From contig JAPDFW010000060.1 of assembly GCA_028826165.1 (NCBI GenBank), positions 1 through 64,000 of the forward strand: a stretch of 64,000 bases of DNA, given 5' to 3'. This DNA comes from Anaeramoeba ignava BMAN. Its lineage: Eukaryota; Protista; Anaeramoebae. This document shows, in pieces, positions 42,601-64,000 of this stretch. How positions within the stretch are numbered: position 1 is the first letter of the stretch; every line of letters starts with the position of its first letter. The position numbers were made by a program, and so were the translations under genes. Under the pieces are notes generated by a model, which was not told where the DNA came from, did no database searches, and saw only the letters and a program-made list of their open reading frames with translations.

Positions 42601-43220
42601 AAGACAACCCAAAAGATATTTTAAAAGATATTTCAAAAGATATTTCAAAAGATATTTCAAAAGATAATTTAAAAGATATTTCAAAAGATAATTTAAAAGA
42701 TAATTTAAAAGATAATTTAAAAGATAATTCAAAAGATATTTTAAAAGATAATTTAAAAGATATTTCAAAAGATAATTCAAAAGATAATTCAAAAGATAAT
42801 TCAAAAGATATTTTAAATCATCATTCAAGTCATCATTCAAGTCATCATTCAAGTCATCATTCAAATCATCATTCAAATCATCATTCAAATCATCATTCAA
42901 GTCATCATTCAAGTCATCATTCAAGTCATCATTCAAATCATTCAAATCATTCAAATCATTCAAATCATTCAAATCATTCAAATCATTCAAATCATTCAAA
43001 TCATCATTCAAAAGATAATTCAAAAAAAGATAATTTAAAAAAAGATAATTTAAAAAAAGATAATTTAAAAAAAGATGATTCAAAAAAAGATGATTTAAAA
43101 GATGATTTAGAAAAAGATAATTTAAAAAAAGATAATTCACCTCAATTAATTCTTCCTGAAAATTTTTCTTCAGCAAAATATTCACATCAAACTAAAAAAC
43201 CAAGAACACAAAAAAAATAA
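39676..43220 (+). CDS. CWC22: Pre-mRNA splicing factor CWC22 (MIF4G + MA3), 6 exons
   Basis: YIPPWKL, YQRMMWEALRKSINGLINK, ENLIRGKGLFARS, IYLTIMSSL, LETNKLRNVAKFFAHLL, TTSSSRIFLKILFQ. Exons start at 39676, 40337, 40759, 41134, 41510 and 42302. Confidence 0.96.
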
Positions 43221-43407: not shown

Positions 43408-44980
43408 ATGTTAATTGATAATCTTACTTGTCAGTTAGGCTTTGGAGTTGCATGTTTCTTTTTTGTTCCAGGATTTATATGGTTAATGGTTGATTCAGTT
43501 ACTCGTTTAAAACTTGAAAAAACTCAATGTGAAATTATTGATAAATATTATGTTGAATATACTTATAATAGTACTGGTGGAAAACCAACTGTTCCTCCTT
43601 CTGCAACTCCTCAATATAGATTACCTAATCCAATTAATTCAATTTCAAATTCAATTAATTCAAATCCAGAAAATTCTTCTTCTTCTTTTTCTCCTCATTC
43701 AATTTCTTTTCAAAATCTTTTTGGAGCTGCTTGTATTACTTCACCAACAATAAATTTTGTTCCTTTTTTTCAAGTAATTCTTTTCTAAAAATCAAATTTA
43801 AATTTATTTTCAAATTTAAATTCAAAATTTATAGATAAAATACACAACAAAAGATGGGAAAGAATATACTGAATATTCTTGTAATTTTGGAAAAGTTTGT
43901 AAGTTTCTAATTTATTCCTTTTTTAAAACATTTTTTTATTCCACTTTTTGATTTGATTTTTAATTAAATAAATAAAATAGGTTGGACTGCAAAAGGTACA
44001 GGTTGTAGAGTAAATATTTATCAAAATCAAAATCAAAATCAAAATTAAAATTAAATCAAAATTAAAATTAAAATAAAAATCAAAATCAAAATCAAAATCA
44101 AAATCAAAATCAAAATTAAAATGGAAATCAAAATCAAAATTAAAATCAAAATCAAAATCAAAATCAAAATCAAAATCAAAATCAAAATCAAAATCAAAAT
44201 CAAAATCAAAATCAATATCAAAATCAAAATCAAAATCAAAATAAAAATCAAAATCAAAATAAATAGGTTAGTGCTTGTGATATGAGAATATCAACCAAAA
44301 TATGTAAAAACTTTTCAAATTTAAAAAAATCAAATATTTATGATAAATATGATATTGGAACAACTGATTGTTGGTATAGTAAAGCATATAATGATTATGC
44401 AACAATTCATTTTCCTCATCCAAATATTTTATGGTCTTTATTTTTTTGGATTCCTTGTTTTATTTCTTGTCTTCCAGTTTTTGGTTATTATAATCAAAAA
44501 ATCAAAGATTGTTGTTATTGTTGTTCAAAAAAACGATCGAATCAAGATGAAGATGATGAAGATGATGAAGATGATGAAGATGATGAATATGATGAAGATG
44601 ATGAAATTGAAATTGAAATTCAAAATCAAAATCAAAATCAAAATCAAAGTGAAGAAATTGAAAATGAAAATGAAAATGAAAATGAAAATGAAGAAATCGA
44701 AGAAACAATCCCAAAATTAAAAGGAGATGAAGATTTTGAAACAATGATTGAAATTTACAGAAATCAAAATAAAAATCTAAATCAAAATGAAAATGAAAAT
44801 GAAAATGAAAATTATAATTATGAACCAAAAGAAAATGATGAAATTCCAATGGAAGTTATTCAAATGCAAATAAATGAATATAATCAACAAGAACCTCAAA
44901 CAAATGAACAAATTAATACTGGTCCTTTATATAATCCTTATTATCAAAATGATCTAAATCAAGAAAACAAAGATTTTTAA
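43408..44980 (+). CDS. Two-TM Cys-rich membrane protein, tandem family copy 1 (exons 43408-43773, 43835-43898, 43981-44009, 44267-44980)
   Basis: In-frame splicing: TM1 (FFVPGFIWLMV), TQCEI, PQYRLPNP, YTTKDG..Y.EYSCNFGKVC|WTAKGTGCR|…DCWYSK…TM2 (LWSLFFWIP), tail GPLYNPYY…NKDF. Confidence 0.9.
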
Positions 44981-45217
44981 AAGAAAAATTTATTTTTTTG
45001 GATTTTCATCTTTTTGGAATTAATTTTTTTCGCTTTTTTTTCTTTTTACAGTTGGATTTGGGTTTTTTGATCAAATATTTTTTTTTTGGTTTCATTTTTT
45101 AAAAAATTTTCAAAACAAGAAAGGGTTAATTAATTAATTATTAATAATAATATCATTACAATTTTTTTTTTGATTTTTGATTTTTGATTATTGATTAAAA
45201 AAACAAAATTTTAAAAA

Positions 45218-46604
45218 ATGGGTCGAATTGCTTGTTGTTTATCATTTTGGTTTGGACTTTTCTGTTTCTTTCTTCCAGGATTTATATGGTTAATAGTTGA
45301 AGTAGTTACTCTTTCAAAATTTGAAAAAACTGAATGTGAAATTATTGATAAGTATTATGTTGAACATCTTTATGATACTTATGAAGGAATGGTAAATGTT
45401 CCTCCTTCTGCAACTCCTCAATATAGATTACCTAATCCAATTAATTCAATTAATTCAATTAATTCAAATTCAAAAAATTCTTCTTCTTCTTTTTCTCCTC
45501 ATTCAATTTCTTTTCATAATCTTTTTGCTTATGATTGTTATGCTAGTCCTACAGATAATGTTGTTCCTTTTTTTGAAGTAATTCTTTTGAAAATTTCAAA
45601 ATCAAAATTCAAAATTCAAAATTTAAAATTATCCAATAGCTCAAATATACAACAAAAGATGGGAAAGAATATACTGAATATTCTTGTAATTTTGGAAAAC
45701 TTTGTAAGTTTCTAATTTATTCCCTTTTTAAAAAAAATTTTTTATTCCACTTTTTGATTTGATTTGATTTGATTTGATTTTTAATTAAATAAATAAAATA
45801 GGTTGGACTGCAAAAGGCTCAGGTTGCACAGTAAATCTTTTAAAATAATAAAATAATAAAATAATAAAATAATAAAATAATAAAATAATAAAATAATAAA
45901 ATAATTAAATAATTGATAAATTAATTAACAAGTCAGAAGTATGTGATGTTAGAATATCATCCAAAATATGTAAAAACTTTGCAAATTTAAAAACATCAAG
46001 TATTTATGATAAATATGATATTGGAACAAATGAATGTTGGTATAGTAAAGCAAATAATGATTATGCAACAATTCATTTTCCATTACCAAATTATTTATGG
46101 TCTTTATTTTTTTGGATTCCTTGTTTTATTTTTTGTCTTCCTATTTTGAGTTATTATTATCAAAAAATCAAAAAATCTTATTGTGATTCTAATTCTTCAT
46201 CTTGTTATTGCTGTTCAAAAAGATCAAATGAAGATGAAGATGATGAAGATGAAGATGAAGTTGTTATTGATATTTCTCAAATAAATAAAGAAAATCCAGA
46301 AAAAAATGAAACTAAAGTAATTGAGGAACCAATCCCAAAATTAAAAGGAGATGAAGATTTTGAAACAATGATTGAAATTTACAGAAATCAAAATAAAAAT
46401 GAAAATGAAAATCAAAATGAAAATGAAAATGAAAATTATAATTATGAACCAAAAGAAAATGATGAAATTCCAATGGAAGTTATTCAAATGCAAATGAATG
46501 AATATAATCAACAAGAACCTCAAACAAATCAACAAATTAATACTGGCCCTTTATATAATCCTTATTACCAAGATTATTCAAATCAAGAAAACAAAGATTT
46601 TTAA
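45218..46604 (+). CDS. Two-TM Cys-rich family copy 2
   Basis: Same 4-exon structure and motifs; small exon 45802-45830. Confidence 0.9.
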
Positions 46605-46844
46605 AAGAAAAAAATTTTTGGATTTTCATTTTTTTGGAATTAATTTTTTTCGCTTTTTTTTTCTTTTTACAGTTGGATTTGATTTTTTTTTTGTTGATCA
46701 ATTTATTTTAATTTTCATTTTTTCATTTTTTCTTTTCACAAAACAAAACAAAACAAAACAAAACAAAACAAAACAAGAACAAAATTAAATTATTTTTTAT
46801 TATTGAAAAAAACAAAATAAAAACAAAATAAAATTTAAAGAAAA

Positions 46845-48829
46845 ATGGGTCGAAAAGCTTGTTGTTTTTCATTTTGGTTTGGACTTTGTATGTTTTTTCT
46901 TCCAGGATTTATATGGTTAATAGTTGATTCAGTTACTCGAGGAAAACTTGTCAAAACTGAATGTGAAATTGTTGACAAATATTATGTTGAATATACTTAT
47001 AATTCTTATGAAGGATTAATAACTGTTCCTCCTGATGCAACTCCTCAATATAGATTACCTAATCCTTTAAGTTCAAATTCAAATTCAAATTTTTCTTCTT
47101 CTTCTTCTTTTTCTCCTCATTCAATTTCTTTTCATAATCTTTTTGCTGATGATGATGATTGTTATACTGGTCCTACAGATAATGTTGTTCCTTTTTTTGA
47201 AGTAATTCTTTTCTAAATTTAAAAATTAAAATTAAAATTAAAATTAAAAATCAAAATCAAAATCAAAATCTAAATCAAAATCAAAATCAAAATCCAAAAT
47301 CAAAATCAAAATCAAAATTAAAATCAAAATCAAAATTAAAATTAAAATTAAAATTAAAATCAAAATTAAAATTAAAATCAAAAATCAAAAATCAAAAATC
47401 AAAAATCAAAATCAAAATCAAAATCAAAATTAAAATCAAAATCAAAATTAAAATTAAAATTAAAATTAAAATTAAAATTAAAATCAAAATCAAAATCAAA
47501 ATCAAAATCAAAATCAAAATTAAAATCAAAATCAAAATTAAAATCAAAAATCAAAATTAAAATTAAAATCAAAATTAAAATCAAAATTAAAATTAAAATT
47601 AAAATCAAAATCAAAATCAAAATCAAAATCAAAATCAAAAATCAAAAATCAAAATTTAAAAATTAAAAAATATCCAATAGCTCAAATATACAACAAAAGA
47701 TGGAACAGAATATGATGAATATTCTTGTAATTTTGGAAAAGTTTGTAAGTTTTTAATTTATTTCTTTTTTAAAAAAAATTTTTTTATTCCACTTTTTGAT
47801 TTGATTTGATTTGATTTGATTTGATTTTTAATTAAATAAATAAAATAGGTTGGACTGCAAAAGGATCAAGTTGCACAGTAAATCTTTTAAAATAATAAAA
47901 TAATAAAATATTAAAATAATAAAATATTAAAATATCAAAATAATAAAATAATAAAATATTAAAATATCAAAATATTAAAATAATAAAATATTAAAATATT
48001 AAAATAATAAAATATCAAAATATCAAAATATTAAAATATTAAAATAATAAAATATTAAAATATTAAAATATTAAAATAATAAAATATTAAGTCATCATCA
48101 TGTGATGTTATGGTATCAACAAAAAAATGTAAAAACTTTGCAAATTTACATACATCAAGTATTTATGATAAATATGATATTGGAAAAACCGATTGTTGGT
48201 ATAGTAAAGCATATAATGATTATGCAACAATTCATTATCCAATGCCAAGCATTTTATGGTCTTTATTTTTTTGGATTCCTCTTGTTTTTGTTTGTCTTCC
48301 TTGCTTGATTTATGTTCGTAAAAATTATGAATGTTGCGAATCCAAATGCCAATGCAAATGCAAAAAATCACCAAAAACTAATATATATCAAGGAAATCTT
48401 TTCCGAAATCAAAATAACCAACAAAATCAATTAAATCAAGGTTTGCTTAATCAAGAACCAAATCATCAATTAAATGAAACTCAAGTATTTGAAGAACCAC
48501 CTTCAAAATTAACAACAAATGAAAATTTAGAAGCAGTCATTGATCTTTATGAAAATCCAAACCAAATTCAAAACCAAATTCAAAATCAAATTCAAAAGGA
48601 TGATACAATCCCAATCGAAGTTATTCAAATGCAAATGAAAGAATTTAATATAAATTATAATCCACCAAATAGTCAAAATCACAACCAAAATTATAATCAA
48701 AATTACAATCAATCTTATAATCAATATGTTAATCAACAAGAACCTCAAACAAATGAACAAATGAATACTGGTCCTTTATATAATCCTTATTATCAAAATG
48801 ATCTAAATCAAGAAAACAAAGATTTTTAA
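46845..48829 (+). CDS. Two-TM Cys-rich family copy 3
   Basis: Same 4-exon structure and motifs. Confidence 0.9.
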
Positions 48830-48903
48830 AGAAAATCAACAAAAACAAACAATTCTTTTTTTATTCTCTCTCTTTTTTTTTTTTCATTTTTTTCTTTTCA
48901 AAA

Positions 48904-50661
48904 ATGAATGATTGTTTATTTTTTGGTAAAAATGAAAATCCAAAACTTATCAAAAATAAACCAGAAAGAATTATAAAAAAACCAATTCAATTTAAATTTG
49001 AAAATGAAAATGAAAATGAAAAACAAATTAAACAAATTTCATCATCAAATTATTCAACAATTTTCCTTTTTAAAAATGGAAAAGCAATAGAATATTTACA
49101 TGAAAATGATTCAAATAAAAATCCTTCAAAAATCCAAATTGAAGAAAATATTCAAAAAGTAACTGTTGGGTATCAAAATGAAGCTATTTTAACAATAGAA
49201 GGAAATGTATTTGCCAAAGGAAGTGATATTATTAATCCAAAAAATCGAAATGAATTTATCAATATTTCATCACTAATTGAAGATACAAATGATAGAATAA
49301 TTGAAGATGTTGTTTCTGGAGAGCATTCAATTTACTTATTAACTTCAAATCAAAATGTTTATGGAATTGGTTCAAATAGATATTGTCAACTTGGTTTTGA
49401 TCCTGAAACATTTAAAGAAGCAGAAAAACCAATTTTAATGATGAAAAATGTTTCTAAAATATTTTCAGGAGCTTGTTCAGCTTCTGTTTTTCTTTTAAAT
49501 CCAAATCGAGAATTATTTGTATGCGGATATAATCAATATAGTCAAAAAAGATTAGGAGAATTGATAAAAGAAAACAAAAAAATAACCAAAATCCAAAATA
49601 TTCCAAAAGGCAAAATAATTGATATTCAATGTGGAAGTATTCATTCATTAATGTTGATTGAAAATGAAAATGAAAATCCAAAAAGAAAACTTTATTCATT
49701 CCAAGGATATAATTTCATACCAAATAATAAAGCTGAACATAATTTTCAATTTACTGAAATCAAATCGTCTTTATTTGAAAATGATGATGATGATATTCTT
49801 GATTTTTCTTGTGAATATGCTAGTAATTTGATTTTAACTCAAAAAGGGAAATTGATTGTATTTGGATGGAATGAATATGGTCAATTAGGAACTGGAGATA
49901 CAAAAAATCAACCAATTCCAATTCAAATTGAACTTCCTGAATTAAGATTTAATGAAGATATTTCCAATTATCATATTCTTTGTGGAGTTAATAGATCATT
50001 TCTTTATTATTCTTCTCTTTCTTTTTCCAATCTTGAAGAAGATTTGATAAAATTATTTAGAAGAAAAGAATTTTGTGATATTTCATTTAAAACAGAAAAT
50101 GGAGAAATAATTGAAGCTCATAAATTAATATTGAAATATAGATTAAATCAAAATCAAAATGAAATTGAAAAACTTCAAGAAATTATTTCAAATAAATCAA
50201 TTAAAGAATCAAATCAAATATTTGAAATGATTTATTCAAATAATTCCAAAATAAATCCAATATTATATTCTGAAATTAAAGAAATTATAAATTTAAATGA
50301 AAAAATTGAAGAAACAATGGAAAGAATTTATTTAAATGAAAATGAAAAAGATTTTATAATTGAAAGAAAAGAAAAACAATATAAATTTCCTAAATTAATA
50401 TTAATAATGAGAAGTGAATTATATCGAGGAATGTTTTTATCTGTTACAAATGATACTTCAAATAAAGTTACAGATTATAGTGAATTAAGTAATAAATCAT
50501 TTCAAATATTTGAATATTGGATTTATTCAAATAAAATTAAAGAAGAAATTGAAATTACACAAGAAATTATTGATGAAATTGAAACTGGAATTGATTATTT
50601 TCAATTAAATCAAACAAATCCAAATTTATTTGATTTATTAATTAAAAAATTTAATAATTAA
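48904..50661 (+). CDS. RCC1-repeat plus BTB/POZ-domain protein, intronless
   Basis: RCC1 repeats (VSGEHSIYLL…GIGSNRYCQLG; GKLIVFGWNEYGQLGTGD…P) followed by two BTB-like units (FCDISF…EAHKLIL; KDFIIE…KLILIMRSELYRGMF…EYWIYSN). Confidence 0.88.
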   Translation: MNDCLFFGKNENPKLIKNKPERIIKKPIQFKFENENENEKQIKQISSSNYSTIFLFKNGKAIEYLHENDSNKNPSKIQIEENIQKVTVGYQNEAILTIEGNVFAKGSDIINPKNRNEFINISSLIEDTNDRIIEDVVSGEHSIYLLTSNQNVYGIGSNRYCQLGFDPETFKEAEKPILMMKNVSKIFSGACSASVFLLNPNRELFVCGYNQYSQKRLGELIKENKKITKIQNIPKGKIIDIQCGSIHSLMLIENENENPKRKLYSFQGYNFIPNNKAEHNFQFTEIKSSLFENDDDDILDFSCEYASNLILTQKGKLIVFGWNEYGQLGTGDTKNQPIPIQIELPELRFNEDISNYHILCGVNRSFLYYSSLSFSNLEEDLIKLFRRKEFCDISFKTENGEIIEAHKLILKYRLNQNQNEIEKLQEIISNKSIKESNQIFEMIYSNNSKINPILYSEIKEIINLNEKIEETMERIYLNENEKDFIIERKEKQYKFPKLILIMRSELYRGMFLSVTNDTSNKVTDYSELSNKSFQIFEYWIYSNKIKEEIEITQEIIDEIETGIDYFQLNQTNPNLFDLLIKKFNN

Positions 50662-51328
50662 AATTAAAATTAAAATTAAAATTAAAATTAAAATTAAAAT
50701 TAAAATTAAAATTAAAATTAAAATTAAAATCAAAATCAAAATTCAAATCAAAATTAAAATTAAAATTAAAATCAAAATTAAAATTAAAATTAAAATTAAA
50801 ATTAAAATTAAAATTAAAATCAAAATTAAAATTAAAATTTAAATCAAAATTAAAATTAAAATTAAAATCAAAATTAAAATCAAAATAAATCAAAATTAAA
50901 ATCAAAATCAAAATCAAAATCAAAATTAAAATCAAAATAAATCAAAATTAAAATCAAAATAAATCAAAATTAAAATTAAAATCAAAATCAAAATCAAAAA
51001 TTAAAATTTAAATCAAAATCAAAATAAATCAAAATTAAAATCAAAATCAAAATCAAAATCAAAATTAAAATCAAAATCAAAATTAAAATCAAAATTAAAA
51101 TTAAAATTAAAATTAAAATTAAAATTAAAATTAAAATTAAAATTAAAATTAAAAATCAAAATTAAAATTAAAATTAAAATTAAAATTCAAATCAAAATCA
51201 AAATCAAAATTAAAATTAAAATTAAAATTAAAATTAAAATTAAAATCAAAATCAAAATTAAAATCAAAACTAAAATTAAAATCAAAATCAAAATCAAATT
51301 CAAAATTAAAATTAAAATTAAAATCAAA
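50658..51328. repeat. (AAAATT/AAAATC)n tract starting at the RCC1-BTB stop codon
   Basis: Direct inspection. Confidence 0.93.
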
Positions 51329-51463
51329 ATTCTTTCTTTTATTCTTTTTTTTTTTCACAAATTCGAGAAATTAAAAATAAAAATAAAAAATTCATTTTTT
51401 TTTAAATTCAAAAGAAGAATTGAATTGTTTAAATTTTATCTTTAAAAACAAATCAAAAAAAAA

Positions 51464-52983
51464 ATGGTAGGATATTCATGTTGTTGGATATCATGTGGAG
51501 TTGGATTTTGTTGCTTTTTTCTGCCAGGATTTATATGGTTAATGGTAGAAGTAGTAACTCGTTCAAAATTTGTTAAAACACAATGTGAAATAACAGATAA
51601 ATATTATGTTGAATATCTTTATGATATGGATGAAGGAAAACCAACTGTTCCTCCTTCTACAACTCCTCAATATAGATTGACTAATCCTATTAATTCAAAT
51701 TATCCAAAAAATGCAACTTCTTTGCAAAAGCAACATATTTCTTCTTTTTCTCCTCATTCTGTTTCTTTAGAAAATCTTTTTGGTGCTTCTAAATGCTATT
51801 CTTCTCCAACTGACAATGTTGTTCCTTTTTTTCTTGTAAACAAAATATTTTCCTAATTTAATTTTAATTTTAATTTTAAATTTAAATTTTAATTTTAATT
51901 TTAATTTTAATTTTAATTTTTAAAAATAGTTGAAATATTATACAGATGATGGAAAAGAATATAATGAATATGCTTGTAATTTTGGAAGAGTTTGTAAGTT
52001 TTCATTCTAATAAAAATCTAATTTAAATCAATATCTTAATATTTAAAAAATGTTACTATTTAGGTTGGAGAGAAAAAGGAATAAGTTGTACAGTATGTTT
52101 TATTATTTTAATAATTTAATAATTTAATAATTTAATATTTTAATATTTTGATATTTTAATATTTTAATATTTTGGATATTTTGGATATTTTGGATAATTT
52201 GGATAATTTAATATTTTAATATTTTAATATTCACAAAAAAAAAAGAATACAAATTGTGATATAAGAATAACATCAAAAGAATGTAAAAATTGGGCAAATT
52301 TAGAAACATCCGATATTTATGAAAAATATCAAATTGGATCAACTAATTGTTGGTATAGCAAAAAATACAATGAATATGCAAGTTGTAGATTTCCATTACC
52401 CAATTTTTTATGGTCATTATTCTTTTGGATTCCACTTTTTTTTACTTGGTTACCAGGAATATGCTATATTTTATATGCTTTTTTCAAGCCAAGCAGAAAC
52501 AACGGTTCTGGATGTTGTAAAAGAAAAAGATTTCGAACTCTAGATTTAGGAGGAATTAATCCAATTGGAGCTACACATCAATTTGAAATCAGTGGACCAA
52601 CTCAAGTCACTCATAACATGTCAGTTCCAGAAACAGTTGGGAAATTAAATGAAAAAACAGATGAAATTGAATTATTTGATGAAACACCTCCAAAATTAAC
52701 AGGAAATGAAGATTTTGAGACAATGGTTCAACTTTATCGAAATCAAACAGGAAATCAAATTCAAAACCAAAATCAAAATCAAATTGAAGGAAATGATTTT
52801 ATTACTTATAATTATGAACCAAAAGGAAATGATGAAATTCCAATGGGATTTATTCAAACTCAAATCAATGAATATAATTCACCTTATAATCAACAAGAAC
52901 CTCAAACAAATGAACAGATTAATATTGGTCCTTTATATAATCCTTATTATCAAGATCCAAATCAAGGAAACAAAGAATTTTAA
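51464..52983 (+). CDS. Two-TM Cys-rich family copy 4
   Basis: Same 4-exon structure; small exon (C)WREKGISCT. Confidence 0.88.
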
Positions 52984-53153
52984 ATAATTTAAAAAAAAGC
53001 AAAAAAGAAAAGGAGAAAATTCATTTTTATATTTTATTTTCTCAATTTATTTATCATTTTTTTTCTTTCTCAAAAACAAAAAACAAAAAACAAAAAAAAC
53101 ATTTGCCATCTCCTTTTCTTTTAATTAATAATTAATAAATCTTAAAAAATAAA

Positions 53154-56028
53154 ATGGTTTCACAAAAATGTTGTAGAATTTCATTTTGTATTGCTTTTTG
53201 TTGTTTTTTTCTACCAGGATTTATTTGGTTAATGGTAGATCAAATTACTCGTTCAAAACTTGTTAAAACACAATGCCAAATAACAGATAAATATTATGTT
53301 GAATATCTTTATGATGCTTATAATGGAAGACCAAGTGTTCCTCCTTCTGCAACTCCACAATACAGATTACCTAATCCTATTAATCCAAATTCAAATTCTT
53401 CTTCTTTTTCTCCTTATTCAATTTCTTTACATAATCTTTTTGGTGATGATGGTGATGATTGTTATACTTCTCCAACAATAAATATTGTTTCTTTTTTTCT
53501 TGTAAACAAAAAATTAATTTCAAATTCAATTCAAATTAAATTTAAATTTAAAAATAAAAAATAAAGTTGGATTACACAACAAAAGATGGAAAAGGTTATA
53601 GTGAATATTCTTGTAATTTTGGAAAAGTTTGTAAGTATTAATTTCAATTTTTATTTAATAATTCAATTTATTTTCTTTTTATTAAAAATAATTTTATTTT
53701 AAATCAATAATTAGGTTGGACAGAAACAGGAACAGGTTGTAAAGTAAATTCCCAAAAATTTAATCTAAATCAAATCAAAACAAATTAAATCAAATCAAAT
53801 CAAATCAAATCAAATTAAATCAAATTAAATCAAATCAAATCAAAATCAAATCAAATCAAATTAAATCAAATCAAATTAAATCAAATCAAATTAAATCAAA
53901 TTAAATCAAATCAAATTAAATTAAATTAAATTCAAATCAAATCAAATCAAATCAAATCAAATCAAATTAAATCAAATCAAATCAAATCAAATCAAATCAA
54001 ATCGAATTAAATTAAATCAAATCAAATCAAATCAAATTAAATTAAATTAAATCAAATCAAATCAAATCAAATCAAATCAAATCAAATTAAATTAAATTAA
54101 ATCAAATCAAATCAAATTAAATTAAATTAAATCAAATCAAAATCAAATTAAATTAAATTAAATTAAATCAAATCAAATCAAATCAAATCAAATCAAATCA
54201 AATCAAATCAAATCAAATCAAATCAAATCAAATCAAATCAAATTAAATTAAAATCAAATCAAATCAAATCAAATCAAATCAAATCAAATTAAATCAAATC
54301 AAATCAAATCAAATCAAATCAAATCAAATTAAATTAAATTAAATCAAATCAAATCAAATCAAATCAAATTCAAATCAAATTAAATTAAATTAAATTAAAT
54401 TCAAATCAAATCAAATCAAATCAAATTAAATTCAAATCAAATCAAATCAAATTAAATCAAATCAAATCAAATTAAATCAAATCAAATCAAATTAAATCAA
54501 ATCAAATCAAATTAAATCAAATAAAATCAAATTCAAATCAAATCAAATCAATTCAAATCAAATCAAATAAAATTAAATTAAATTGAATTAAATCAAATTA
54601 AATCAAATCAAATCAAATTAAATCAAATTAAATCAAATCAAATCAAATTAAATTAAATCAAATCAAATCAAATTAAATCAAATTAAATCAAATTAAATCA
54701 AATTAAATCAAATTAAATCAAATTAAATCAAATTAAATCAAATCAAATCAAATCAAATTCAAATCAAATTAAATTAAATCAAATTAAATCAAATTAAATT
54801 AAATCAAATCAAATCAAATCAAATTAAATCAAATTAAATCAAATTAAATCAAATTAAATCAAATTAAATCAAATTAAATCAAATCAAATCAAATCAAATC
54901 AAATCAAATTAAATTAAATTAAATCAAATTAAATTAAATTAAATCAAATCAAATTAAATTAAATCAAATCAAATTAAATCAAATCAATTCAAATCAAATC
55001 AAATCAAATCAAATTAAATCAAATCAAATTAAATTCAAATTAAATCAAATCAAATTAAATTAAATCAAATCAAATCAAATTAAATCAAAATCAAATCAAA
55101 TCAAATCAAATCAAATCAAATCAAATCAAATTAAATTAAATCAAATCAAATCAAATTAAATTAAATTAAATTAAATTAAATTAAATTAAATCAAATTAAA
55201 TCAAATTAAATCAAATCAAATTAAATTAAATTAATTCAAATCAAATCAAATCAAATTAAATTAAATTAATTCAAATCAAATCAAATTCAATTCAATTCAA
55301 TTCAATTCAATTCAATTCAATTAAATCAAATTAAATTCAATTCAATTCAAATCAAATTAAAATAGTCAACTTCATGTGATATGAGAATATCAACCAGAGA
55401 ATGTAAAAATTTTGCAAATTTAAAAACATCAAGTATTTATGAAAAATATGATGTTGGAACAGCTGATTGTTGGTATAGTAAAGCATATAATGAATATGCA
55501 ACAATTCATTTCCCACATCCAAGTTATTTATGGTCATTATTTTTTTGGGTTCCTTGTTTCTTTTTCTGTCTTCCAGTTTTGAGTTACAAATGTAAAAAAA
55601 GGAAAAATAAGAAAATAAATTACCATTTTAGAACAAATCCAAATCCAAATCCAAATCCAATTCAAAATCAAATTCAAAATCAAGAAAATTTTGGAAATGA
55701 AACACAAGTAATGGAAGAACCACCTCCAAAATTAAAACCAAATGATAATTTTCAAACAAAAGATGAAATTTATCAAAATCAATATCAAAACCAATATCAA
55801 AATCAATATCAAAATCAAATTGAAGGAAATGATTATAATTATAATTATGAACCAACTGGAAATGATGAAATTCCAATGGAAGTTATTCAAATGCAAATCA
55901 ATGAATATAATTCACCTTATAATCAATATGTTAATCAACAAGAACCTCAAACAAATGATCAAATGAATACTGGTCCTTTATATAATCCTTATAATCAAGA
56001 TGAAAATCAAGGAAACAAAGAATTTTAA
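53154..56028 (+). CDS. Two-TM Cys-rich family copy 5 (intron 3 = 53744-55365)
   Basis: Same 4-exon structure; small exon 53715-53743 (C)WTETGTGCK. Confidence 0.88.
53765..55360. repeat. (AAATC/AAATT)n pentamer array inside copy 5 intron 3
   Basis: Direct inspection. Confidence 0.95.
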
Positions 56029-56276
56029 ATAATTTAAAAAGAAAACAAACAAAAACAAAAAAAGGAAAAATTTGCTTTTTCAATTTTCCATTTTAAATTT
56101 ATTTTCAAATTATTTTCCAATTCCAATTTATTTTTAATTTTGAAAAAAAAAAAGAATAAAAAAAAGAAGAAAATCAACAAAAAAATAATTTTTTTTGATC
56201 AAATTTTCATTTCATTTTTTTATTTTATTTTTATTTTTATTCTTTTTTTATTTTATTCAAAAAAACACAAAAGAAA

Positions 56277-58418
56277 ATGGTTGGAAAAATATGTTGTAGA
56301 ATTTTTTTTTGGATAAGTTTTTGGGCATTTTTTGTACCTCCAATGATTTGGTTAATAATTGATGTTGTAACTCGTTCAAAATTTGAATCAGCAACATGTG
56401 AAATAGTAGATAAACATTATACTCAATATAAATATGATTTTTATGATGATATTCCTGATATAAATCCTCAAACAACTCCTCAATATAGATCTCCAAATCC
56501 TTTTGCTTTAAATTCTGATTCTAATTCTGATTTTAATTCTGATCTTTCTTATTTTCTTTCTTTAAAAAATCTTTTTGGTGCTTCTTGTTATCCAACTCCA
56601 ACTTATAATTATATTTCTTTTTTTCTTGTAAAATTAAATTCAAAATCAAAATCAAAATCAAAATCAAAATCAAAATCAAAATCAAAATCAAAATCAAAAT
56701 TAAATTCAAAATCAAAATTAAATTCAAAATCAAAATTAAATTCAAAATCAAAATTAAATTCAAAATCAAAATTAAATTCAAAATCAAAATTAAATTCAAA
56801 ATCAAAATCAAAATCAAAATCAAAATTAAATTCAAAATCAAAATCAAAATTAAAATCAAAATTAAATTCAAAATCAAAATCAAAATCAAAATCAAAATTA
56901 AAATTTAATTCAAAATCAAAATCAAAATCAAAATCAAAATCAAAATTAAATTCAAAATCAAAATCAAAATTAAATTCAAAATCAAAATCAAAATCAAAAT
57001 CAAAATCAAAATCAAAATCAAAATCAAAATCAAAATCAAAATCAAAATCAAAATCAAAATCAAAATCAAAATCAAAATTAAAATCAAAATCAAAATTAAA
57101 ATTAAAATCAAAATCAAAATCAAAATTAAAATTAAAATTAAAATCAAAATCAAAATCAAAATCAAAATCAAAATCAAAATCAAAATCAAAATCAAAATTA
57201 AAATCAAAATCAAAATTAAATTCAAAATCAAATTCAAAATCAAAATCAAAATTAAAATCAAAATCAATATCAAAATCAAAATCAAAATCAAAATCAAAAT
57301 CAATATCAAAATCAAAATCAAAATCAAAATCAAAATCAAAATAAAAATCAAAATCAAAATCAAAATCAAAATTAAAATCAAAATCAAAATCAAAATCAAA
57401 ATCAAAACCAAAATTAAAATCAAAATCAAAATTAAATTCAAAAATTTAAATTAAAATCAAAATCAAATTCAAATTCAAAATCAAAATCAAGTTAAATTAC
57501 ACAACAAAAGATGGAAAAGAATATAGTGAATATGCTTGTAATTTTGGAAGACGTTGTAAGTGTTTTTTTAAATAAATTTGGAAAATAAATCCAAAAAATA
57601 AAATAATATTAAATATTAAATATTAAATAGGTTGGACTGCAACAGGAGCTTTAAATTGCAGAGTAAATCCAAAATTAAATTTAAATCCAAATTAAAATTA
57701 AAATTAAAATTTGAATTGAAATCAAATCAAAATTAAAATTTAAATCAAAATAAAAATTGGAAAAAAATAGGGACAACATTGTTCCGATAAAATATCTTCC
57801 AAAGATTGCAAAATTTTTGTAAATTTAAAAACAGATAAAGTATATGAAAAATATGATATTGGAACAGCTGATTGTTGGTATAGTAAAGCAAAAAATGAAT
57901 ATGCAACAATTCATTTCCCAATTCCAAGTTATTTATGGTCATTATTTTTTTGGGTTCCTTGTTTCTTTTTCTGTCTTCCAGTTTTGAGTTATTATTTTAA
58001 AAAAAAAACAAAAGATGAAAATCAAGTTAGAAATGTTCATCAAGCAAATCATCAACAAAATCGATTTGAAAATCATTTCCATGAACCAAAAGAAACAAAT
58101 GAGACTATTGTTATTGATGAACCACCTCCAAAAGCAACAAGAAATGATGATTTTGGAGGAATGAATCAACTTTATCAAAATTTCATGCAAAATCAAAATC
58201 AAAATCAAAATCAATTTGGAAACAATGATATTTATAATGAACCAAAAGGAAATGATGAAATTCCAATGGAAGTTATTCAAATGCAAATGGATGAATATCA
58301 ACTTGCTTTTGATAATCAACAAGAACAACAAAATCAACCTCCAATTAATCAATTTAATGCTGGTCCTTTATATAATCCTTATAATCAAGATGCAAATCAA
58401 CCAAACAGAGATTTTTAA
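56277..58418 (+). CDS. Two-TM Cys-rich family copy 6
   Basis: Same structure; the SKSK part of ORF 56277-57344 is intron-1 microsatellite; small exon (C)WTATGALNCR. Confidence 0.88.
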
Positions 58419-58611
58419 AAATCAAAATTCAAAATCAAAATTAAAATCAAAATCAAAATCAAAATCAAAAAAGAAAAGGAGAAAATTCATTTTTATATTT
58501 TATTTTCTCAATTTATTTCTCATTCTTTTCTTTCTTAAAAACAAAAAACAAAAAAAACATTTGCCATCTCCTTTTCTTTTAATTAATAATTAATTAATCT
58601 TAAAAAATAAA

Positions 58612-60204
58612 ATGGTTTCACAAAAATGTTGTAGAATTTCATTTTGGTTTGGATTTATTTTGTTTTTTCTACCAGGATTCGTTTGGTTAATGGTAGATCA
58701 AATTACTCGTTCAAAACTTGTTAAAACACAATGTGAAATAACAGATAAATATTATGTTGGATACCTTTATGATTCTTATAGTGAAAAACCAACTGTTCCT
58801 CCTTCTGCAACTCCACAATACAGATTACCTAATCCTATTAATCCAAATTCAAATTCTTCTTCTTTTTCTCCTTATTCAATTTCTTTACATAATCTTTTTG
58901 GTGATGATAATGAGGACAAAGGTTGTGATATTTCTCCAACAATAAATATTGTTTCTTTTTTTCTTGTAAACAAAAAATTCAATTCAAAATCAAAATCAAA
59001 ATCAAAATTAAAATCAAAATTAAAATCAAAATTAAAATTAAAATCAAAATCAAAATTAAAATTAAAATTAAAATTAAAATCAAAATCAAATTCAAATACA
59101 AAATCAAAATCAAAATTAAAATTAAAATCAATATCAAAATTAAAATTAAAATTAAAATTAAATTCAAAATCAAAATCAAAATCAAAATCAAGTTAAATTA
59201 CACAACAAAAGATGGAACAAAATATAGTGAATATTCTTGTAATTTTGGAAGAGTTTGTAAGTATTTATTTAAATTTTTATTTAATAATTCAATTTATTTT
59301 CTTTTTATTAAAAATAATTTTATTTTAAATCAATAATTAGGTTGGACAGAAAAAGGAACAGATTGTAAAGTAAATTTCCAAAAATTTAATCTAAATCAAA
59401 TCAAATCAAATTAAATCAAATCAATTCAATATTCAATTTTTAATATTCAATTAGGCTTCTTCATGTGATATAAAAATAACATCTCAAGAATGTAAAAATT
59501 TTGCAAATTTAGAAACAGAAGATATTTATGAAAAATATGATCCTGGAGATGCAACTTGTTGGTATAGTAAAAAATATAATGAATATGCAACAGTTCGTTT
59601 TCCATTACCCAATTTTTTATGGACATTATTTTTTTGGATTCCACTTTTTTTTACTTGCATTCCAGTATTTTTGTGGTTTAGATCCGAAAAAAAAGGTAGT
59701 TGTGATTGTTTTAAGAGTTGTGATGATGTTTGTTGTAATTGTAGATGTAATTGCAATTCAAGAAGAGGTGTAAGAAATCCACCAATTCCAAATAATCAAC
59801 CAATGGAAATTAGTGGACCAACTCAAATAACTCATAATGTATCAATTCCTGAACCAGTTGGAGAACGTGATGATATGTCAGACTCAAGTGATACAGTTGA
59901 ACCACCACCACCAAAATTAACAGGAAATGAAGATTTTGAAACAATGGTTCAAATTTATGGAAATCGAAATCAAACAGGAAATCAAACTGGAAATCAAACT
60001 GGAAATGATTATAATTATAATTATGAACCAAAAGGAAATGATGAAATTCCAATGGAAGTTATTCAAATGCAAACGAATGAATATCAACTTGCTTTTGATA
60101 ATCAACAAGAACAACAAAATCAACCTCCAATTAACCAATTTAATGCTGGTCCTTTATATAATCCTTATAATCAAGATGCAAATCAACCAAACAGAGATTT
60201 TTAA
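58612..60204 (+). CDS. Two-TM Cys-rich family copy 7
   Basis: Same structure; small exon (C)WTEKGTDCK. Confidence 0.88.
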
Positions 60205-60796
60205 AAATTAATATCAAAATCAAAACCAAAATCAAAATCAAAATCAAAATCAAAATCAAAATTAATATCAAAATTAATATCAAAATTAATATCAAAATCA
60301 AAATTAAAATTAAAATTAAAATTAAAATCAAAATCAAAATTAAAATTAAAATCAAAATTTAACAAAATTAAAATCAAAATCAAAATTAAAATTAAATTCA
60401 AAATTCAATATCAAAATCAAAATCAAATTAAAATCAAAATTAAAACCAAAATCAAAATTAAAATTAAATTCAAAATTAAAACCAAAATCAAAATTAAAAT
60501 CCAAAATTAAAACCAAAATCAAAATCAAAATTAAAATTAAAAATTAATATCAAAATTAATATCAAAATCAAAATTAAAATTAAAATCAAAATTAAAACCA
60601 AAATCAAAATTAAAATCAAATTCAAATTCAAAATTAAAATCAAAATTAAAATTCAAAATTAATAAATAAATTTAAAGTTCGAAGTTCAAATTAAAATCGA
60701 AAAAATAAATTTTCATTTTTTTCATTTTTATTTTTTTTATTCTTATTTTATTTTATTTTTTTTTAATTAAATTTTTGAATTGGCAAAAAAGTAAAA

Positions 60797-62808
60797 ATGG
60801 TAGATACAATACTTTGTCGAGTATGTTGTGGAGTTGGATTTTGTTGTTTTTTTTTACCTGCATTTATATGGTTAATGGTAGAAGTAGTAACTCGTTCAAA
60901 ATTTGAAAAAGTTGATTGTGAAATAACTGATAAATATTATGTTGAATATCTTGTTGAAGGAATATCTGATACTTATGTTCCTCCTTCTACAACTCCTCAA
61001 TATAGATTACCAAATCCTCTTGATCTTTCTCCAAAAAATGTTACTCCTTTTCATTCTTTTTCACCTCATTCTGTTTCTTTGGAAAATCTTTTTGGTGCAA
61101 ATTGTATTCCAAGACCTACTATTAACTATATTTCTTTTTTTGAAGTAACATTCTTTTTTCAATTTAAAATTCAAATCAAAATTAAAATTAAAATTAAATT
61201 CAAAAATTAAAATTAAAATCAAAAATTAAAATTAAAATCAAAAATTAAAATTAAAATTAAAATCAAAATCAAAATCAAAATCAAATTAAAATTAAAATCA
61301 AAATTAAAATTAAAATTAAAATCAAAATTAAAATCAATTTCAAAATTCAAATCAAAATTAAATTCAAATTCAAAATCAAAATCAAAATTAAAATCAAAAT
61401 CAAAATTAAAATTAAAATTAAATTCAAAATCAAATTTAAAATTAAAATTAAAATTAAAATCAAAATCAAAATTAAAATCCAAATCAAATTCAAAATCAAA
61501 ATCAAATTCAAAATTAAATTCAATTTAAAATTAAAATTCATTTATAAAATTAAAATTAAAATTAAATTCAAAAATTATAATTAAAATTAAAATTAAAATC
61601 AAAATTAAAATTAAAATTAAAATTAAATTCAAAAATTAAATTCAAAATCAAAATTAAATTCAATTTAAAATTAAAATCAAAATTAAAATCAAAATTAAAA
61701 TCCAAATTAAAATCAAAATTAAAATTAAAATCAAAATAAAAATCAAATTTAATTTTAATTTTAATATTAATATTAAAGGTGGATTACACAACAAAGGATG
61801 GAACAAAATATAATGAATATGCTTGTAATTTTGGAAGACGTTGTAAGTATTTTTATATATTATTTTATAAATAAATCCAAAAAAATAAATGGAATAAAAA
61901 TAAATTTGGAAAATAAATCAAAAAATAAAATAGGTTTTACAAGAAGAGGAACTGGTTGCAAAGTAAATTTTCAAAAAAAAAAAATAAATAAATTCAATTC
62001 AATTACATGAAATCAAATCTAAAAAAAAATTTATTTTTAATTCAAATAAAAAAATTAGTCTTCAAATTGTGATGTGAAAATAACATCTCAAGAATGTAAA
62101 AATTTTGCAAATTTAGAAACAGATGATATGTATGAAAAATATGATCCTGGAGATGCAACTTGTTGGTATAGTAAAAAATATAATGAATATGCAACAGTTC
62201 ATTTTCCATTACCCAATTTTTTATGGTCATTATTTTTTTGGATTCCACTTTTTTTTACTTGCATTCCAGTATTTTTGTGGTTTAGATCTAAAACCAAAGG
62301 TAGTTGTGATTGTTTTAAGAGTTGTGATGATGTTTGTTGTAATTGTAGATGTAATTGCAATTCAAGAAGAAGTGTAAGAAATCCACCAATTCCAAACAAC
62401 CGACCAATGGAAATTAGTGGACCAACTCAAATAACTCATAATGTATCAATTCCTGAACCAGTTGGAGAACGTGATGATATGTCAGACTCAAGTGATACAG
62501 TTGAACCACCACCACCAAAATTAACAGGAAATGAAGATTTTGAAACAATGGTCCAAATTTATGGAAATCGAAATCAAACTGGAAATCAAACTGGAAATCA
62601 AACTGGAAATGATTATAATTATAATTATGAACCAACTGGAAATGATGAAATTCCAATGGAAGTTATTCAAATGCAAATGAATGAATATAATTCACCTTAT
62701 AATCAATATTATAATCAACAAGAACCTCAAACAAATGATCAAATGAATGCTGGTCCTTTATATAATCCTTATAATCAAGATTCAAATCAAGGAAACAAAG
62801 AATTTTAA
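60797..62808 (+). CDS. Two-TM Cys-rich family copy 8
   Basis: Same structure; small exon (C)FTRRGTGCK. Confidence 0.88.
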
Positions 62809-63037
62809 ATAATTTAAAAACAAAAACAAGAAAAGAAAAATTTTCTTTTTCAATTTTCCATTTTAAATTTATTTCCAAATTATTTTCCAATTCCAATTTA
62901 TTTTTAATTTTGAAAAAAAAAAGAGAGAAGAAAACCAACAAAAAAATAATTTTTTTTGATCAAATTTTCATTTCATTTTTTTATTCTTATTTTTATTCTT
63001 TTTTTGTTTTATTTTTTGAATAGGCAAAAAAGTCAAA

Positions 63038-64000
63038 ATGGTTTCGCCACATTTTTGTATGAATTCTTTTCGTATTGCTTTTTGTTGTTTTTTTTTACCT
63101 GCATTTATATGGTTAATAATTGATGTTGTAACTCGTTCAAAATTTGAAAAAGTTGATTGTGAAATAACTGATAAATATTATGTTGAATATCTTGTTGAAG
63201 GAATAACAGATACTTATGTTCCTTCTTATACAACTCCTCAATATAGATTACCAAATCCTCTTGATCTTTCTCCAAAAAATGTTACTCCTTTTCATTCTTT
63301 TTCACCTCATTCTGTTTCTTTGGAAAATCTTTTTGGTGCAAATTGTTTTCCAAGACCTACTATTAACTATATTTCTTTTTTTCAAGTAACATTCTTTTTT
63401 CAATTTAAAATCCAAATTCAAAATCAAAATCAAAATTAAAATCAAAATTAAAATTAAAATTAAAATCAAAAAATATAGTTAAATTACACAACAAAGGATG
63501 GAACAAAATATAGTGAATATGCTTGTAATTTTGGAAGACGTTGTAAGTGTTTTTATATATTATTTTATAAATAAATCCAAAAAAAATGGAATAAAAATAA
63601 ATTTGGAAAATAAATCAAAAAATAAAAATAAAATAGGTTTTACAAGAAGAGGAACTAGTTGCAAAGTAAATTTCCAAAAATAAATAAATAAATTCAATTT
63701 AATTACATGAAATCAAATCTAAAAAAAAATTTATTTTTAATTCAAATAAAATTAGTCTTCAAGTTGTGATAAAAAAATAACATCTCAAGAATGTAAAAAT
63801 TTTGCAAATTTAGAAACAGATGATATGTATGAAAAATATGATCTTGGAGATGCAACTTGTTGGTATAGTAAAAAATATAATGAATATGCAACAGTTCATT
63901 TTCCATTACCCAATTTTTTATGGTCATTATTTTTTTGGGTTCCACTTTTTTTTACTTGCATTCCAGTATTTTTGTGGCTTAGATCCGAAAAAAAAGGTAG
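63038..64000 (+). CDS. Two-TM Cys-rich family copy 9 (truncated by the window end)
   Basis: Exons 1-3 and the start of exon 4 through TM2 are present. Confidence 0.85.

What the first reader, a model, noticed from the sequence alone, without database searches (positions are those of the whole stretch)
43408..64000. Tandem array (9 or more copies) of an unannotated two-TM, disulfide-rich membrane protein family with BK-beta (KCNMB)-like architecture and a conserved Tyr-motif tail
Seen: nine head-to-tail genes with the same 4-exon layout, which the ORF track splits into fragments. Each encodes a Cys-rich N-terminus, TM1, a loop with invariant cysteines (xCEI/xCQI, C, CNFGxxC, C, C, CK, CWYSK), TM2, a juxtamembrane segment that is often Cys-rich, and an acidic tail with conserved blocks (PKL.G.EDFETM in most copies, YxxEPxGNDEIPMEVIQMQ, GPLYNPY, terminal NKDF/NKEF/NRDF). 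Variation concentrates in loop segments between the cysteines. Knowledge: two TMs around a Cys-rich loop with 'PQY' and 'LxSLFW' recall the KCNMB/CaKB and tipE channel auxiliary subunits. NPxY (NPYY in copies 1-4) and YxxΦ are endocytic/adaptor motifs, and juxtamembrane Cys clusters are typical palmitoylation sites. Inference: a diversifying surface receptor or channel-modulator family with a variable ectodomain and a constant trafficking/signalling tail, possibly recognising prey or symbionts.
Basis: partly seen in the sequence, partly recalled or inferred. Interest (0 to 1): 0.82.

Follow-up and report, generated by a model that had tools for sequence, protein, structure and literature searches.

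The report
Tandem BK-beta-like membrane protein genes
The anaerobic amoeba Anaeramoeba ignava carries a head-to-tail row of ten intact genes for small two-helix membrane proteins whose predicted outer domain looks most like the beta (helper) subunit of animal BK potassium channels, a protein type so far thought to have arisen in animals; what they do here is untested.

Summary
Window 43408-64000 (Anaeramoeba ignava, contig start) holds nine paralogues, and a tenth lies just beyond. Each has four exons, GT-AG introns at the same positions and phases, no internal stop, and encodes 364-405 aa. Three are in GenBank as 'hypothetical protein' or 'two pore channel 3', so 'unannotated' is only partly right.

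Each protein has TM1, a loop with eight invariant cysteines, TM2, and an acidic N/Q-rich tail with conserved blocks.

The BK-beta reading is partly supported:
- No member hits Pfam CaKB, TipE or DUF3592.
- A confident AlphaFold model (pLDDT 84) has the ten best Foldseek PDB hits all on human Slo1 beta4 (E 0.02, above the tool's 0.001 cut-off). The order of strands and helices matches beta4, and eight cysteines fit its four disulfides.
- Language-model neighbours are CaKB/TipE clusters.
- The genome paper's PANTHER table files A. flamelloides homologues under 'BK channel subunit beta'.
- The genome has eight Slo-type alpha genes.
- Giant-virus DUF3592-like proteins match the fold with better E-values, so the link may be only at superfamily level.

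The copies are mosaics, and the tail is homogenised even at synonymous sites. The most variable parts are the disordered insert and the cytosolic spacer, not the folded loop. No RNA reads could be laid and channel binding is untested. Another note of this scan (s1-698376) covers this same stretch.

The parts
43408..44980 (+). copy 1 (390 aa)
   Evidence: Exons 43408-43773, 43835-43898, 43981-44009, 44267-44980. GT-AG throughout, no internal stop.
45218..46604 (+). copy 2 (374 aa) = GenBank KAJ5076490, named 'two pore channel 3' (P0002)
   Evidence: Exons 45218-45577, 45640-45703, 45802-45830, 45933-46604. Residues 1-245 were the target of the AlphaFold model.
46845..48829 (+). copy 3 (395 aa)
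   Evidence: Exons 46845-47201, 47681-47744, 47849-47877, 48092-48829.
48904..50661 (+). interloper: RCC1-BTB gene, not a family member
   Evidence: Pfam RCC1, RCC1_2 and BTB over their cut-offs; the RCC1-like domain (WD40_RLD) matches at E 7e-34 but below its curated cut-off. It lies between copies 3 and 4.
51464..52983 (+). copy 4 (400 aa) = GenBank KAJ5076493, M0811_06073 (P0001)
   Evidence: Exons 51464-51835, 51930-51993, 52064-52092, 52246-52983.
53154..56028 (+). copy 5 (367 aa)
   Evidence: Exons 53154-53501, 53567-53630, 53715-53743, 55366-56028. The 1622-nt intron 3 is filled by an (AATCA)n microsatellite of about 317 units.
56277..58418 (+). copy 6 (364 aa) = GenBank KAJ5076495, M0811_06075 (P0003)
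   Evidence: Exons 56277-56627, 57492-57555, 57631-57662, 57771-58418.
58612..60204 (+). copy 7 (398 aa), the clearest mosaic
   Evidence: Exons 58612-58965, 59193-59256, 59341-59369, 59455-60204. Exon 1 is 93% identical to copy 5, the exon 4 loop and spacer 95-96% to copy 8, and the tail end 99% to copy 6.
60797..62808 (+). copy 8 (396 aa)
   Evidence: Exons 60797-61144, 61779-61842, 61934-61962, 62059-62808.
63038..64000 (+). copy 9 (405 aa), runs off the window; stop codon ends at C61:64532
   Evidence: Exons 63038-63385, 63479-63542, 63637-63665, 63756-64532.

Best explanation
This is a species-specific tandem expansion of a rare protist family of hairpin membrane proteins. Ten genes lie here and at least 18 in the genome.

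Shown or predicted:
- Each protein has a short Cys-bearing N-terminus, TM1, a beta-rich outer domain of about 170 residues with eight invariant cysteines (enough for four disulfides), TM2, and a 120-160-residue acidic N/Q-rich cytosolic tail.
- The array members carry a disordered insert of about 30 residues in the outer domain.
- The predicted outer domain plus TM hairpin resembles the BK-channel beta4 subunit more than any other solved structure.
- The closest A. flamelloides relatives are filed under PANTHER 'BK channel subunit beta'.

Inferred:
- The family is a remote branch of the CaKB/TipE (and perhaps DUF3592) superfamily.
- The proteins act as accessory subunits that pack their TM hairpin against a multi-pass partner. 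The likeliest partner is one of the eight Slo-type channels of this amoeba, with the outer domains sitting over the channel mouth.
- The conserved tail motifs, including the family-exclusive C-terminal NQxN[KR][DE]F, recruit sorting or scaffolding factors.
- The paralogues offer alternative outer domains and spacers on a shared tail.

The array evolves by gene conversion or unequal crossover, which makes the copies mosaics and keeps the tail uniform.
For: Gene structure and intactness.

Family range: a profile search of 1.8 billion representatives found only 16 hits, from A. ignava, A. flamelloides and a few metagenome eukaryotes.

Fold and classification:
- The AlphaFold model on a 40-row alignment has pLDDT 83.8 and pTM 0.73, with two long helices, five strands, two short helices and further strands.
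- Foldseek against PDB puts Slo1 beta4 chains at ranks 1-10 (E 0.02, prob 0.89).
- Beta4 is described as betaA-E, alphaF-G, betaH-I with four disulfides (PMC6934384).
- The eight loop cysteines are invariant in both A. ignava subfamilies.
- ESM features: P0010 scores 0.94 to CaKB/TipE clusters with 207 of 256 features shared. P0002:1-245 scores 0.90 to TipE/CaKB, and 0.93 to giant-virus clusters, one of which is partly CaKB.
- PANTHER PTHR10258 lists M0812_21464 (=P0008) and M0813_11629 (=P0021). P0002 against P0008 gives BLASTP E 3e-16, and P0008 groups near the array in a weakly supported tree.

Possible partner: eight BK_channel_a loci, matching eight PTHR10027 genes. One has Ion_trans + BK_channel_a + Slo RCK domains.

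Tail: the C-terminal motif occurs 15 times in the genome, all in family genes.

Array evolution: mosaic structure and low synonymous divergence in the tail.
Against: - No Pfam CaKB, TipE or DUF3592 hit for any exon or homologue, even at E up to 10. No CaKB match in the genome. The family profile finds no KCNMB chain among PDB sequences.
- The Foldseek E-value (0.02) and TM-scores (0.30-0.48) are weak.
- Giant-virus DUF3592-like 2-TM proteins match with better E-values (6e-6). The Atlas search by shape gave DUF3592 and unnamed clusters, not CaKB.
- No A. ignava gene appears in the PTHR10258 row.
- No binding evidence: the one complex prediction gave no verdict.
- No read-level RNA evidence was obtained.
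Confidence: 0.5

Rival explanations
1. The family is a generic DUF3592-like hairpin protein (two TM helices around an OB-like beta domain), as found in bacteria and giant viruses of amoebae. It has no relation to channels, and the likeness to BK beta is only fold-level or convergent. It would act as a stand-alone membrane protein of unknown role, for example in membrane organisation or stress.
For: - Foldseek against BFVD matches Pithovirus, Pandoravirus, Tupanvirus and Megaviridae 2-TM proteins, several named DUF3592, at E 6e-6 to 1e-3.
- The Atlas by shape gives DUF3592 clusters.
- The top language-model neighbours of P0002 are Nucleocytoviricota clusters.
- No CaKB profile hit.
Against: - No Pfam DUF3592 hit either.
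- Eight invariant cysteines suit a secreted-side eukaryotic domain like that of beta4.
- Among solved structures only beta4 aligns over TM1, outer domain and TM2 together.
- PANTHER places the homologues with BK beta.
- One giant-virus neighbour cluster itself carries CaKB in 17% of members, so the two kinds may be one superfamily rather than alternatives.
Confidence: 0.25
2. One reading: a diversifying cell-surface receptor repertoire. A variable outer domain would recognise prey, symbionts or matrix, and the constant tail would couple to endocytosis or phagocytosis through NPxY-type motifs.
For: - Tandem expansion with mosaic shuffling.
- Crude dN/dS of 0.7-0.9 in the folded loop, higher than in the TM helices.
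- NPYY in copies 1-4 and a conserved tail.
- The host has an elaborate symbiosome and expanded trafficking families (PMC11550330).
Against: - The folded outer domain is less variable than the cytosolic spacer and the disordered insert.
- No region of the fold shows dN/dS above 1.
- NPxY is lost in copies 5-9 (NPYN).
- The tail is uniform at synonymous sites, so its constancy is not evidence of selection.
- No known ligand-binding domain was found.
Confidence: 0.15
3. The array is transcriptionally silent or decaying duplicated DNA, and the gene models are annotation artefacts.
For: No run on record as RNA holds the stretch.
Against: - All nine copies keep intact frames and 27 of 27 canonical splice sites at conserved phases.
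- Three models match GenBank models from a project that mapped polyA+ RNA-seq to this genome.
- An A. flamelloides family member is a complete ORF in a transcriptome assembly (P0024).
- The eight cysteines are invariant at 23-35% identity to A. flamelloides homologues.
Confidence: 0.03

Closest known systems
BK (Slo1) channel beta subunits KCNMB1-4 (Pfam CaKB PF03185; PANTHER PTHR10258); solved as beta4 in 6V22, 6V35 and 9CZx
   Same: Two TM helices around a mostly-beta outer domain. The order five strands, two short helices, further strands is the same. Eight loop cysteines match beta4's four disulfides. Beta4 is the best and only full-length match among solved structures. Slo-type alpha genes are present in the genome.
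   Different: No sequence-profile match. The loop is longer, with a disordered low-complexity insert. There is a long acidic N/Q-rich C-terminal tail with its own motifs, where KCNMB tails are short. The host is a metamonad-related protist, not an animal. The one Slo-type alpha gene read in full (L007) shows no obvious extra S0 helix before S1 (not examined further). Binding is untested.
Insect TipE/TEH1-4 sodium-channel auxiliary subunits (Pfam TipE PF16972)
   Same: The same hairpin topology with a disulfide-rich loop. TipE is an accepted distant relative of Slo-beta (PMC3240667). Its genes are also clustered in tandem. TipE/CaKB clusters are language-model neighbours.
   Different: No Pfam hit. 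TipE, Teh3 and Teh4 have longer loops, and Teh3 and Teh4 carry EGF-like domains there. Their partner is a NaV channel, which was not looked for here.
DUF3592 (PF12158) and giant-virus 2-TM proteins
   Same: TM, beta domain, TM fold. These give the best Foldseek E-values of all libraries searched and appear in the Atlas by shape.
   Different: No Pfam DUF3592 hit. Function is unknown. No close sequence relative in viral contigs.

Membership tests
CaKB / KCNMB (PF03185) | Significant match to the Pfam CaKB profile | tested here: not met
   No hit at E up to 1-10 for the window exons or for 10 homologues. No six-frame hit in the genome (the control genomes also gave nothing). The family profile against PDB sequences finds no KCNMB chain.
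CaKB / KCNMB (PF03185) | Two TM helices flanking one folded loop of 120 residues or more | tested here: met
   AlphaFold model: helices 3-33 and 205-237 with a beta-rich domain between them, pLDDT above 90 outside the insert. Which side the loop faces is inferred from the eight cysteines and was not measured.
CaKB / KCNMB (PF03185) | Outer domain of betaA-E, two short helices and betaH-I, held by four disulfides (PMC6934384) | tested here: met
   The model has the same order of elements. Eight loop cysteines are invariant in both A. ignava subfamilies. The actual pairing could not be read because no coordinates were available.
CaKB / KCNMB (PF03185) | Structural superposition on solved beta4 clearly above background | tested here: inconclusive
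CaKB / KCNMB (PANTHER PTHR10258) | Assignment by the PANTHER family model | tested here: inconclusive
   The genome paper's table lists the A. flamelloides homologues M0812_21464 (=P0008) and M0813_11629 (=P0021), but no A. ignava gene. The link to the window is by homology (E 1.7e-15; E 3e-16).
CaKB / KCNMB | Binds a Slo-type alpha subunit and alters its gating | not testable with these tools
   Eight alpha-type genes exist. The one complex prediction gave no verdict and counts neither way.
TipE (PF16972) | Match to the Pfam TipE profile | tested here: not met
   No hit. TipE clusters appear only as language-model neighbours at 0.85-0.94.
DUF3592 (PF12158) | Match to the Pfam DUF3592 profile, or clear fold identity | tested here: inconclusive
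   No Pfam hit. Foldseek against BFVD hits DUF3592-named giant-virus proteins at E 3e-5 to 8e-4 with TM 0.3-0.45. Atlas TM is 0.33-0.42.

The most novel reading that the evidence does not exclude
BK-beta/TipE-type channel helper subunits are older than animals. This anaerobic amoeba has at least 18 of them beside eight Slo-type channels. It shuffles them in tandem arrays by gene conversion, which would give a combinatorial set of channel modulators with different outer domains and cytosolic spacers on one shared sorting tail.
Probability: 0.25. Interest if true: 0.75.

Novelty: new variant of a known kind. Interest (0 to 1): 0.55.

Why it matters
Slo-beta and TipE subunits are treated in the literature as descending from an ancestral metazoan auxiliary subunit (PMC3240667). 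A clearly related, expanded family in Anaeramoeba, with hints in Naegleria and uncultured eukaryotes, would move the origin of this class of channel helper to early eukaryotes. It might also tie it to the widespread DUF3592-like proteins of bacteria and giant viruses. It would give a simple system for asking what these subunits did before nervous systems existed. The array is also a clean example of mosaic concerted evolution: one part of the protein is homogenised while the others diverge.

Tried and rejected
- RNA evidence. The look-up of sequencing runs listed three weak holders, none on record as RNA. No reads were laid.
- Complex prediction of a Slo-type TM domain (L007 ORF residues 90-335) with P0002:1-245 gave no verdict (score 0.00). 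It is evidence neither for nor against binding.
- The first AlphaFold run, on a 3-row alignment, was useless (pLDDT 47).
- The word-based homologue searches returned only the window's own three GenBank proteins, plus one metagenome protein (P0013) in the third search.
- The profile against PDB sequences, and a TM2 piece against PDB sequences, gave only chance hits.
With P0010 alone it found no viral relative.
- pdb_via_wide was dominated by helical hairpins aligned to the two TM helices.
- The Atlas search by shape was weak.
- I could not run hhalign against CaKB because no tool could give me KCNMB sequences. My recollection that KCNMB TM2 starts with a '[FH][SC][LF][FL]WP' motif like the family's 'LWSLFFWIP' is from memory and untested.
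- Joined spliced sequences of my own were not built or searched. Searches used exons by reference, or the GenBank proteins that a tool returned. Scripts handled the exons separately.
- The name 'two pore channel 3' for P0002 has no support in any search here.
Full report
**What is there**

The window is the first 64 kb of a 569,623-bp contig of Anaeramoeba ignava (G000:C61), with about 19% G+C. From 43408 to the end of the window, exon-wise tblastn with the pieces of one copy finds the same four pieces repeated nine times on the + strand. A tenth copy lies at C61:64820-66455.

I read every junction:
- All 27 introns are GT..AG.
- Intron 1 is phase 0, after '..FF[ELQ]'.
- Intron 2 is phase 1 and splits the second Cys codon of CNFG..C.
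- Intron 3 is phase 0.
- Every copy has a total length divisible by three and no internal stop, and encodes 364-405 aa.

Copies 2, 4 and 6 match in length, and at the exon junctions checked, the GenBank proteins KAJ5076490 ('two pore channel 3'), KAJ5076493 and KAJ5076495 (both 'hypothetical protein'). So the array is real and the genes look intact, and 'unannotated' is only partly true. An RCC1-BTB gene (48904-50661) sits between copies 3 and 4.

Searches used single exons by reference, or the three full-length GenBank proteins that a tool returned.

**The protein**

Each copy has these parts:
- a short N-terminus, usually with CC at residues 6-7;
- TM1;
- a loop with eight invariant cysteines (P0002: C40, C107, C136, C142, C150, C155, C164, C186);
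- TM2, beginning with 'LWSLFFWIP';
- a basic, often Cys-rich juxtamembrane stretch;
- a 120-160-residue acidic, N/Q-rich tail with three conserved blocks and a terminal NQxN[KR][DE]F.

That terminal motif followed by a stop codon occurs 15 times in the 42.8-Mb genome. All 15 are in family genes, and the reversed control pattern gives none.

**Family range**

The same genome has a second subfamily with a 'CWYWKDDP..LWSLFLWIP' signature. It comprises two tandem triplets (C61:262-270 kb and C86:314-321 kb) and a single gene on C58. A further single gene on C71 is closer to the array type. This gives at least 18 genes.

A profile of the three window proteins, searched against 1.8 billion representatives, found only 16 hits with E up to 0.001:
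- A. ignava proteins;
- seven A. flamelloides proteins of 188-308 aa, mostly without a long tail;
- five proteins from metagenomes;
- one likely spurious plant protein (P0014, Striga asiatica; six short matched stretches).

One metagenome homologue lies on a contig with cyclin, CFAP161 and DEAH-helicase genes, so it comes from another microbial eukaryote. One A. flamelloides member is a complete ORF in a transcriptome assembly (P0024).

On a short, weakly resolved tree the array copies group with C71 and with A. flamelloides P0008 and P0022. Their internal branches are short, which fits an A. ignava-specific expansion.

**Is it BK-beta-like?**

The sequence-profile tests fail:
- No exon and no homologue hits Pfam CaKB, TipE or DUF3592, even at E up to 10.
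- The genome has no six-frame CaKB match.
- The family profile finds no KCNMB chain among PDB sequences.

The structure and other lines point the other way:
- With a 40-row alignment (full-length homologues plus single-exon translations by reference), AlphaFold gave a confident model of P0002:1-245. It has pLDDT 83.8 and pTM 0.73, with only residues 71-98, the low-complexity 'PQYRLPNP..' insert, disordered.
- The order of elements in the model is TM1, five strands, two short helices, further strands, TM2.
- Among 350,542 PDB chains, Foldseek's ten best hits are all Slo1 beta4 chains (E 0.02-0.4, prob up to 0.89).
- ESM-Atlas features put A. flamelloides P0010 next to CaKB/TipE clusters (0.94, 207 of 256 features shared). 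P0002:1-245 lies next to giant-virus clusters, one partly CaKB, and then TipE/CaKB clusters (0.93 and 0.90).
[quoted passage not shown] It lists no A. ignava gene there (PMC11550330 supplement).
- P0008 is a clear homologue of the window proteins: profile E 1.7e-15 and BLASTP E 3e-16 at 35% identity over 120 aa.

The caveats are real:
- The Foldseek E-value is above 0.001 and TM-scores are 0.30-0.48.
- In the unbiased VIA search, unrelated helical hairpins reach the same Z.
- Against predicted viral structures, the model matches Pithovirus, Pandoravirus, Tupanvirus and Megaviridae 2-TM proteins, several named DUF3592, at E 6e-6 to 1e-3.
- The Atlas search by shape gives DUF3592 and unnamed clusters.

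My reading is that the family belongs to a broad 'TM, disulfide- or OB-like beta domain, TM' superfamily. Within it, the closest characterised members are the Slo-beta/TipE subunits. Membership of CaKB proper is not shown.

**A possible partner**

The genome has eight loci over the Pfam BK_channel_a cut-off. This matches the eight A. ignava genes under PANTHER PTHR10027 in the genome paper. One full ORF has Ion_trans, BK_channel_a and two Slo-like RCK domains. A single complex prediction of its TM domain with P0002:1-245 gave no verdict and counts neither way. Presence of the channels is permissive, not evidence of binding.

**How the array evolves**

I ran per-exon codon alignments with Nei-Gojobori counts. 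These are crude in a genome this A+T-rich and probably overestimate dN/dS.

| Region | dN/dS or divergence | aa identity |
|---|---|---|
| TM helices | dN/dS about 0.5 | |
| Folded loop parts | dN/dS 0.7-0.9 | 0.64-0.75 |
| Disordered insert | dN/dS above 1 | 0.42 |
| Cytosolic spacer | dN/dS above 1 | 0.29 |
| Tail blocks 2 and 3 | synonymous divergence 0.05-0.06 | |
| Ectodomain and TM regions | synonymous divergence 0.17-0.45 | |

So the 'constant tail' is constant because it is homogenised, whatever selection adds.

Region-by-region identity matrices show clear mosaics:
- Copy 7 is 93% identical to copy 5 in exon 1.
- It is 95-96% identical to copy 8 in the exon 4 loop, TM2 and spacer.
- It is 99% identical to copy 6 at the tail end, where it is only 80% identical to copy 8.
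- Copy 3 is 99% identical to copy 1 at the tail end but only 68-80% in the two preceding blocks.

This agrees with the scan's own note on the same stretch (s1-698376).

**Verdict**

The 'diversifying receptor' half is not supported as stated.

The most likely function is an accessory subunit of a multi-pass membrane protein, plausibly a Slo-type channel, with a tail that carries sorting or scaffold motifs. I put the whole statement at about 0.5 and the specific Slo-helper role at about 0.25-0.3.

Expression in A. ignava could not be checked.

Noticed in passing
window 53762-55361: Intron 3 of copy 5 is almost entirely a pentanucleotide microsatellite, (AATCA) x about 317 at 89% matches. This explains the strong negative GC skew of 54-56 kb. 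Other long introns of the array (copy 6 intron 1, 864 nt; copy 8 intron 1, 634 nt; copy 3 intron 1, 479 nt) also read as simple repeats in the ORF track.
   Followed up: partly
window 48904-50661: An intact single-exon RCC1-BTB gene sits inside the array. Earlier notes of this scan (s1-689318, s1-689404) describe a family of about 1,200 such genes in this genome.
   Followed up: no
L007:1136-3937 (G000:C126:115635-118436): A Slo-type channel ORF (Ion_trans + BK_channel_a + 2 Slo RCK domains) reads 'FTVGLANV' where K+ channels have TVGYGD in the selectivity filter. At least one of the eight Slo-like channels may therefore not be K+-selective.
   Followed up: no
window 42330-43220: The gene just upstream of the array encodes a 296-aa protein made almost wholly of runs (DS)n, (KDNL/KDIS)n and (HHSS/NHS)n. 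It has no Pfam match.
   Followed up: no
G000:C61:262000-270500 (L002) and G000:C86:314500-321000 (L003): Two further tandem triplets of a second subfamily ('CWYWKDDPRYS..LWSLFLWIP') share the same exon order and the same C-terminal NQxNKEF as the window array.
   Followed up: partly
Nothing about them was learnt.
   Followed up: no
BFVD hits of model m5e03334b7d34: Many giant viruses of amoebae (Pithovirus, Pandoravirus, Tupanvirus, Orpheovirus, Bodo saltans virus, CroV) encode 2-TM proteins of this fold, some named DUF3592. One Atlas cluster of such viral proteins carries Pfam CaKB in 17% of its members. This hints at a link between DUF3592 and CaKB/TipE.
   Followed up: no
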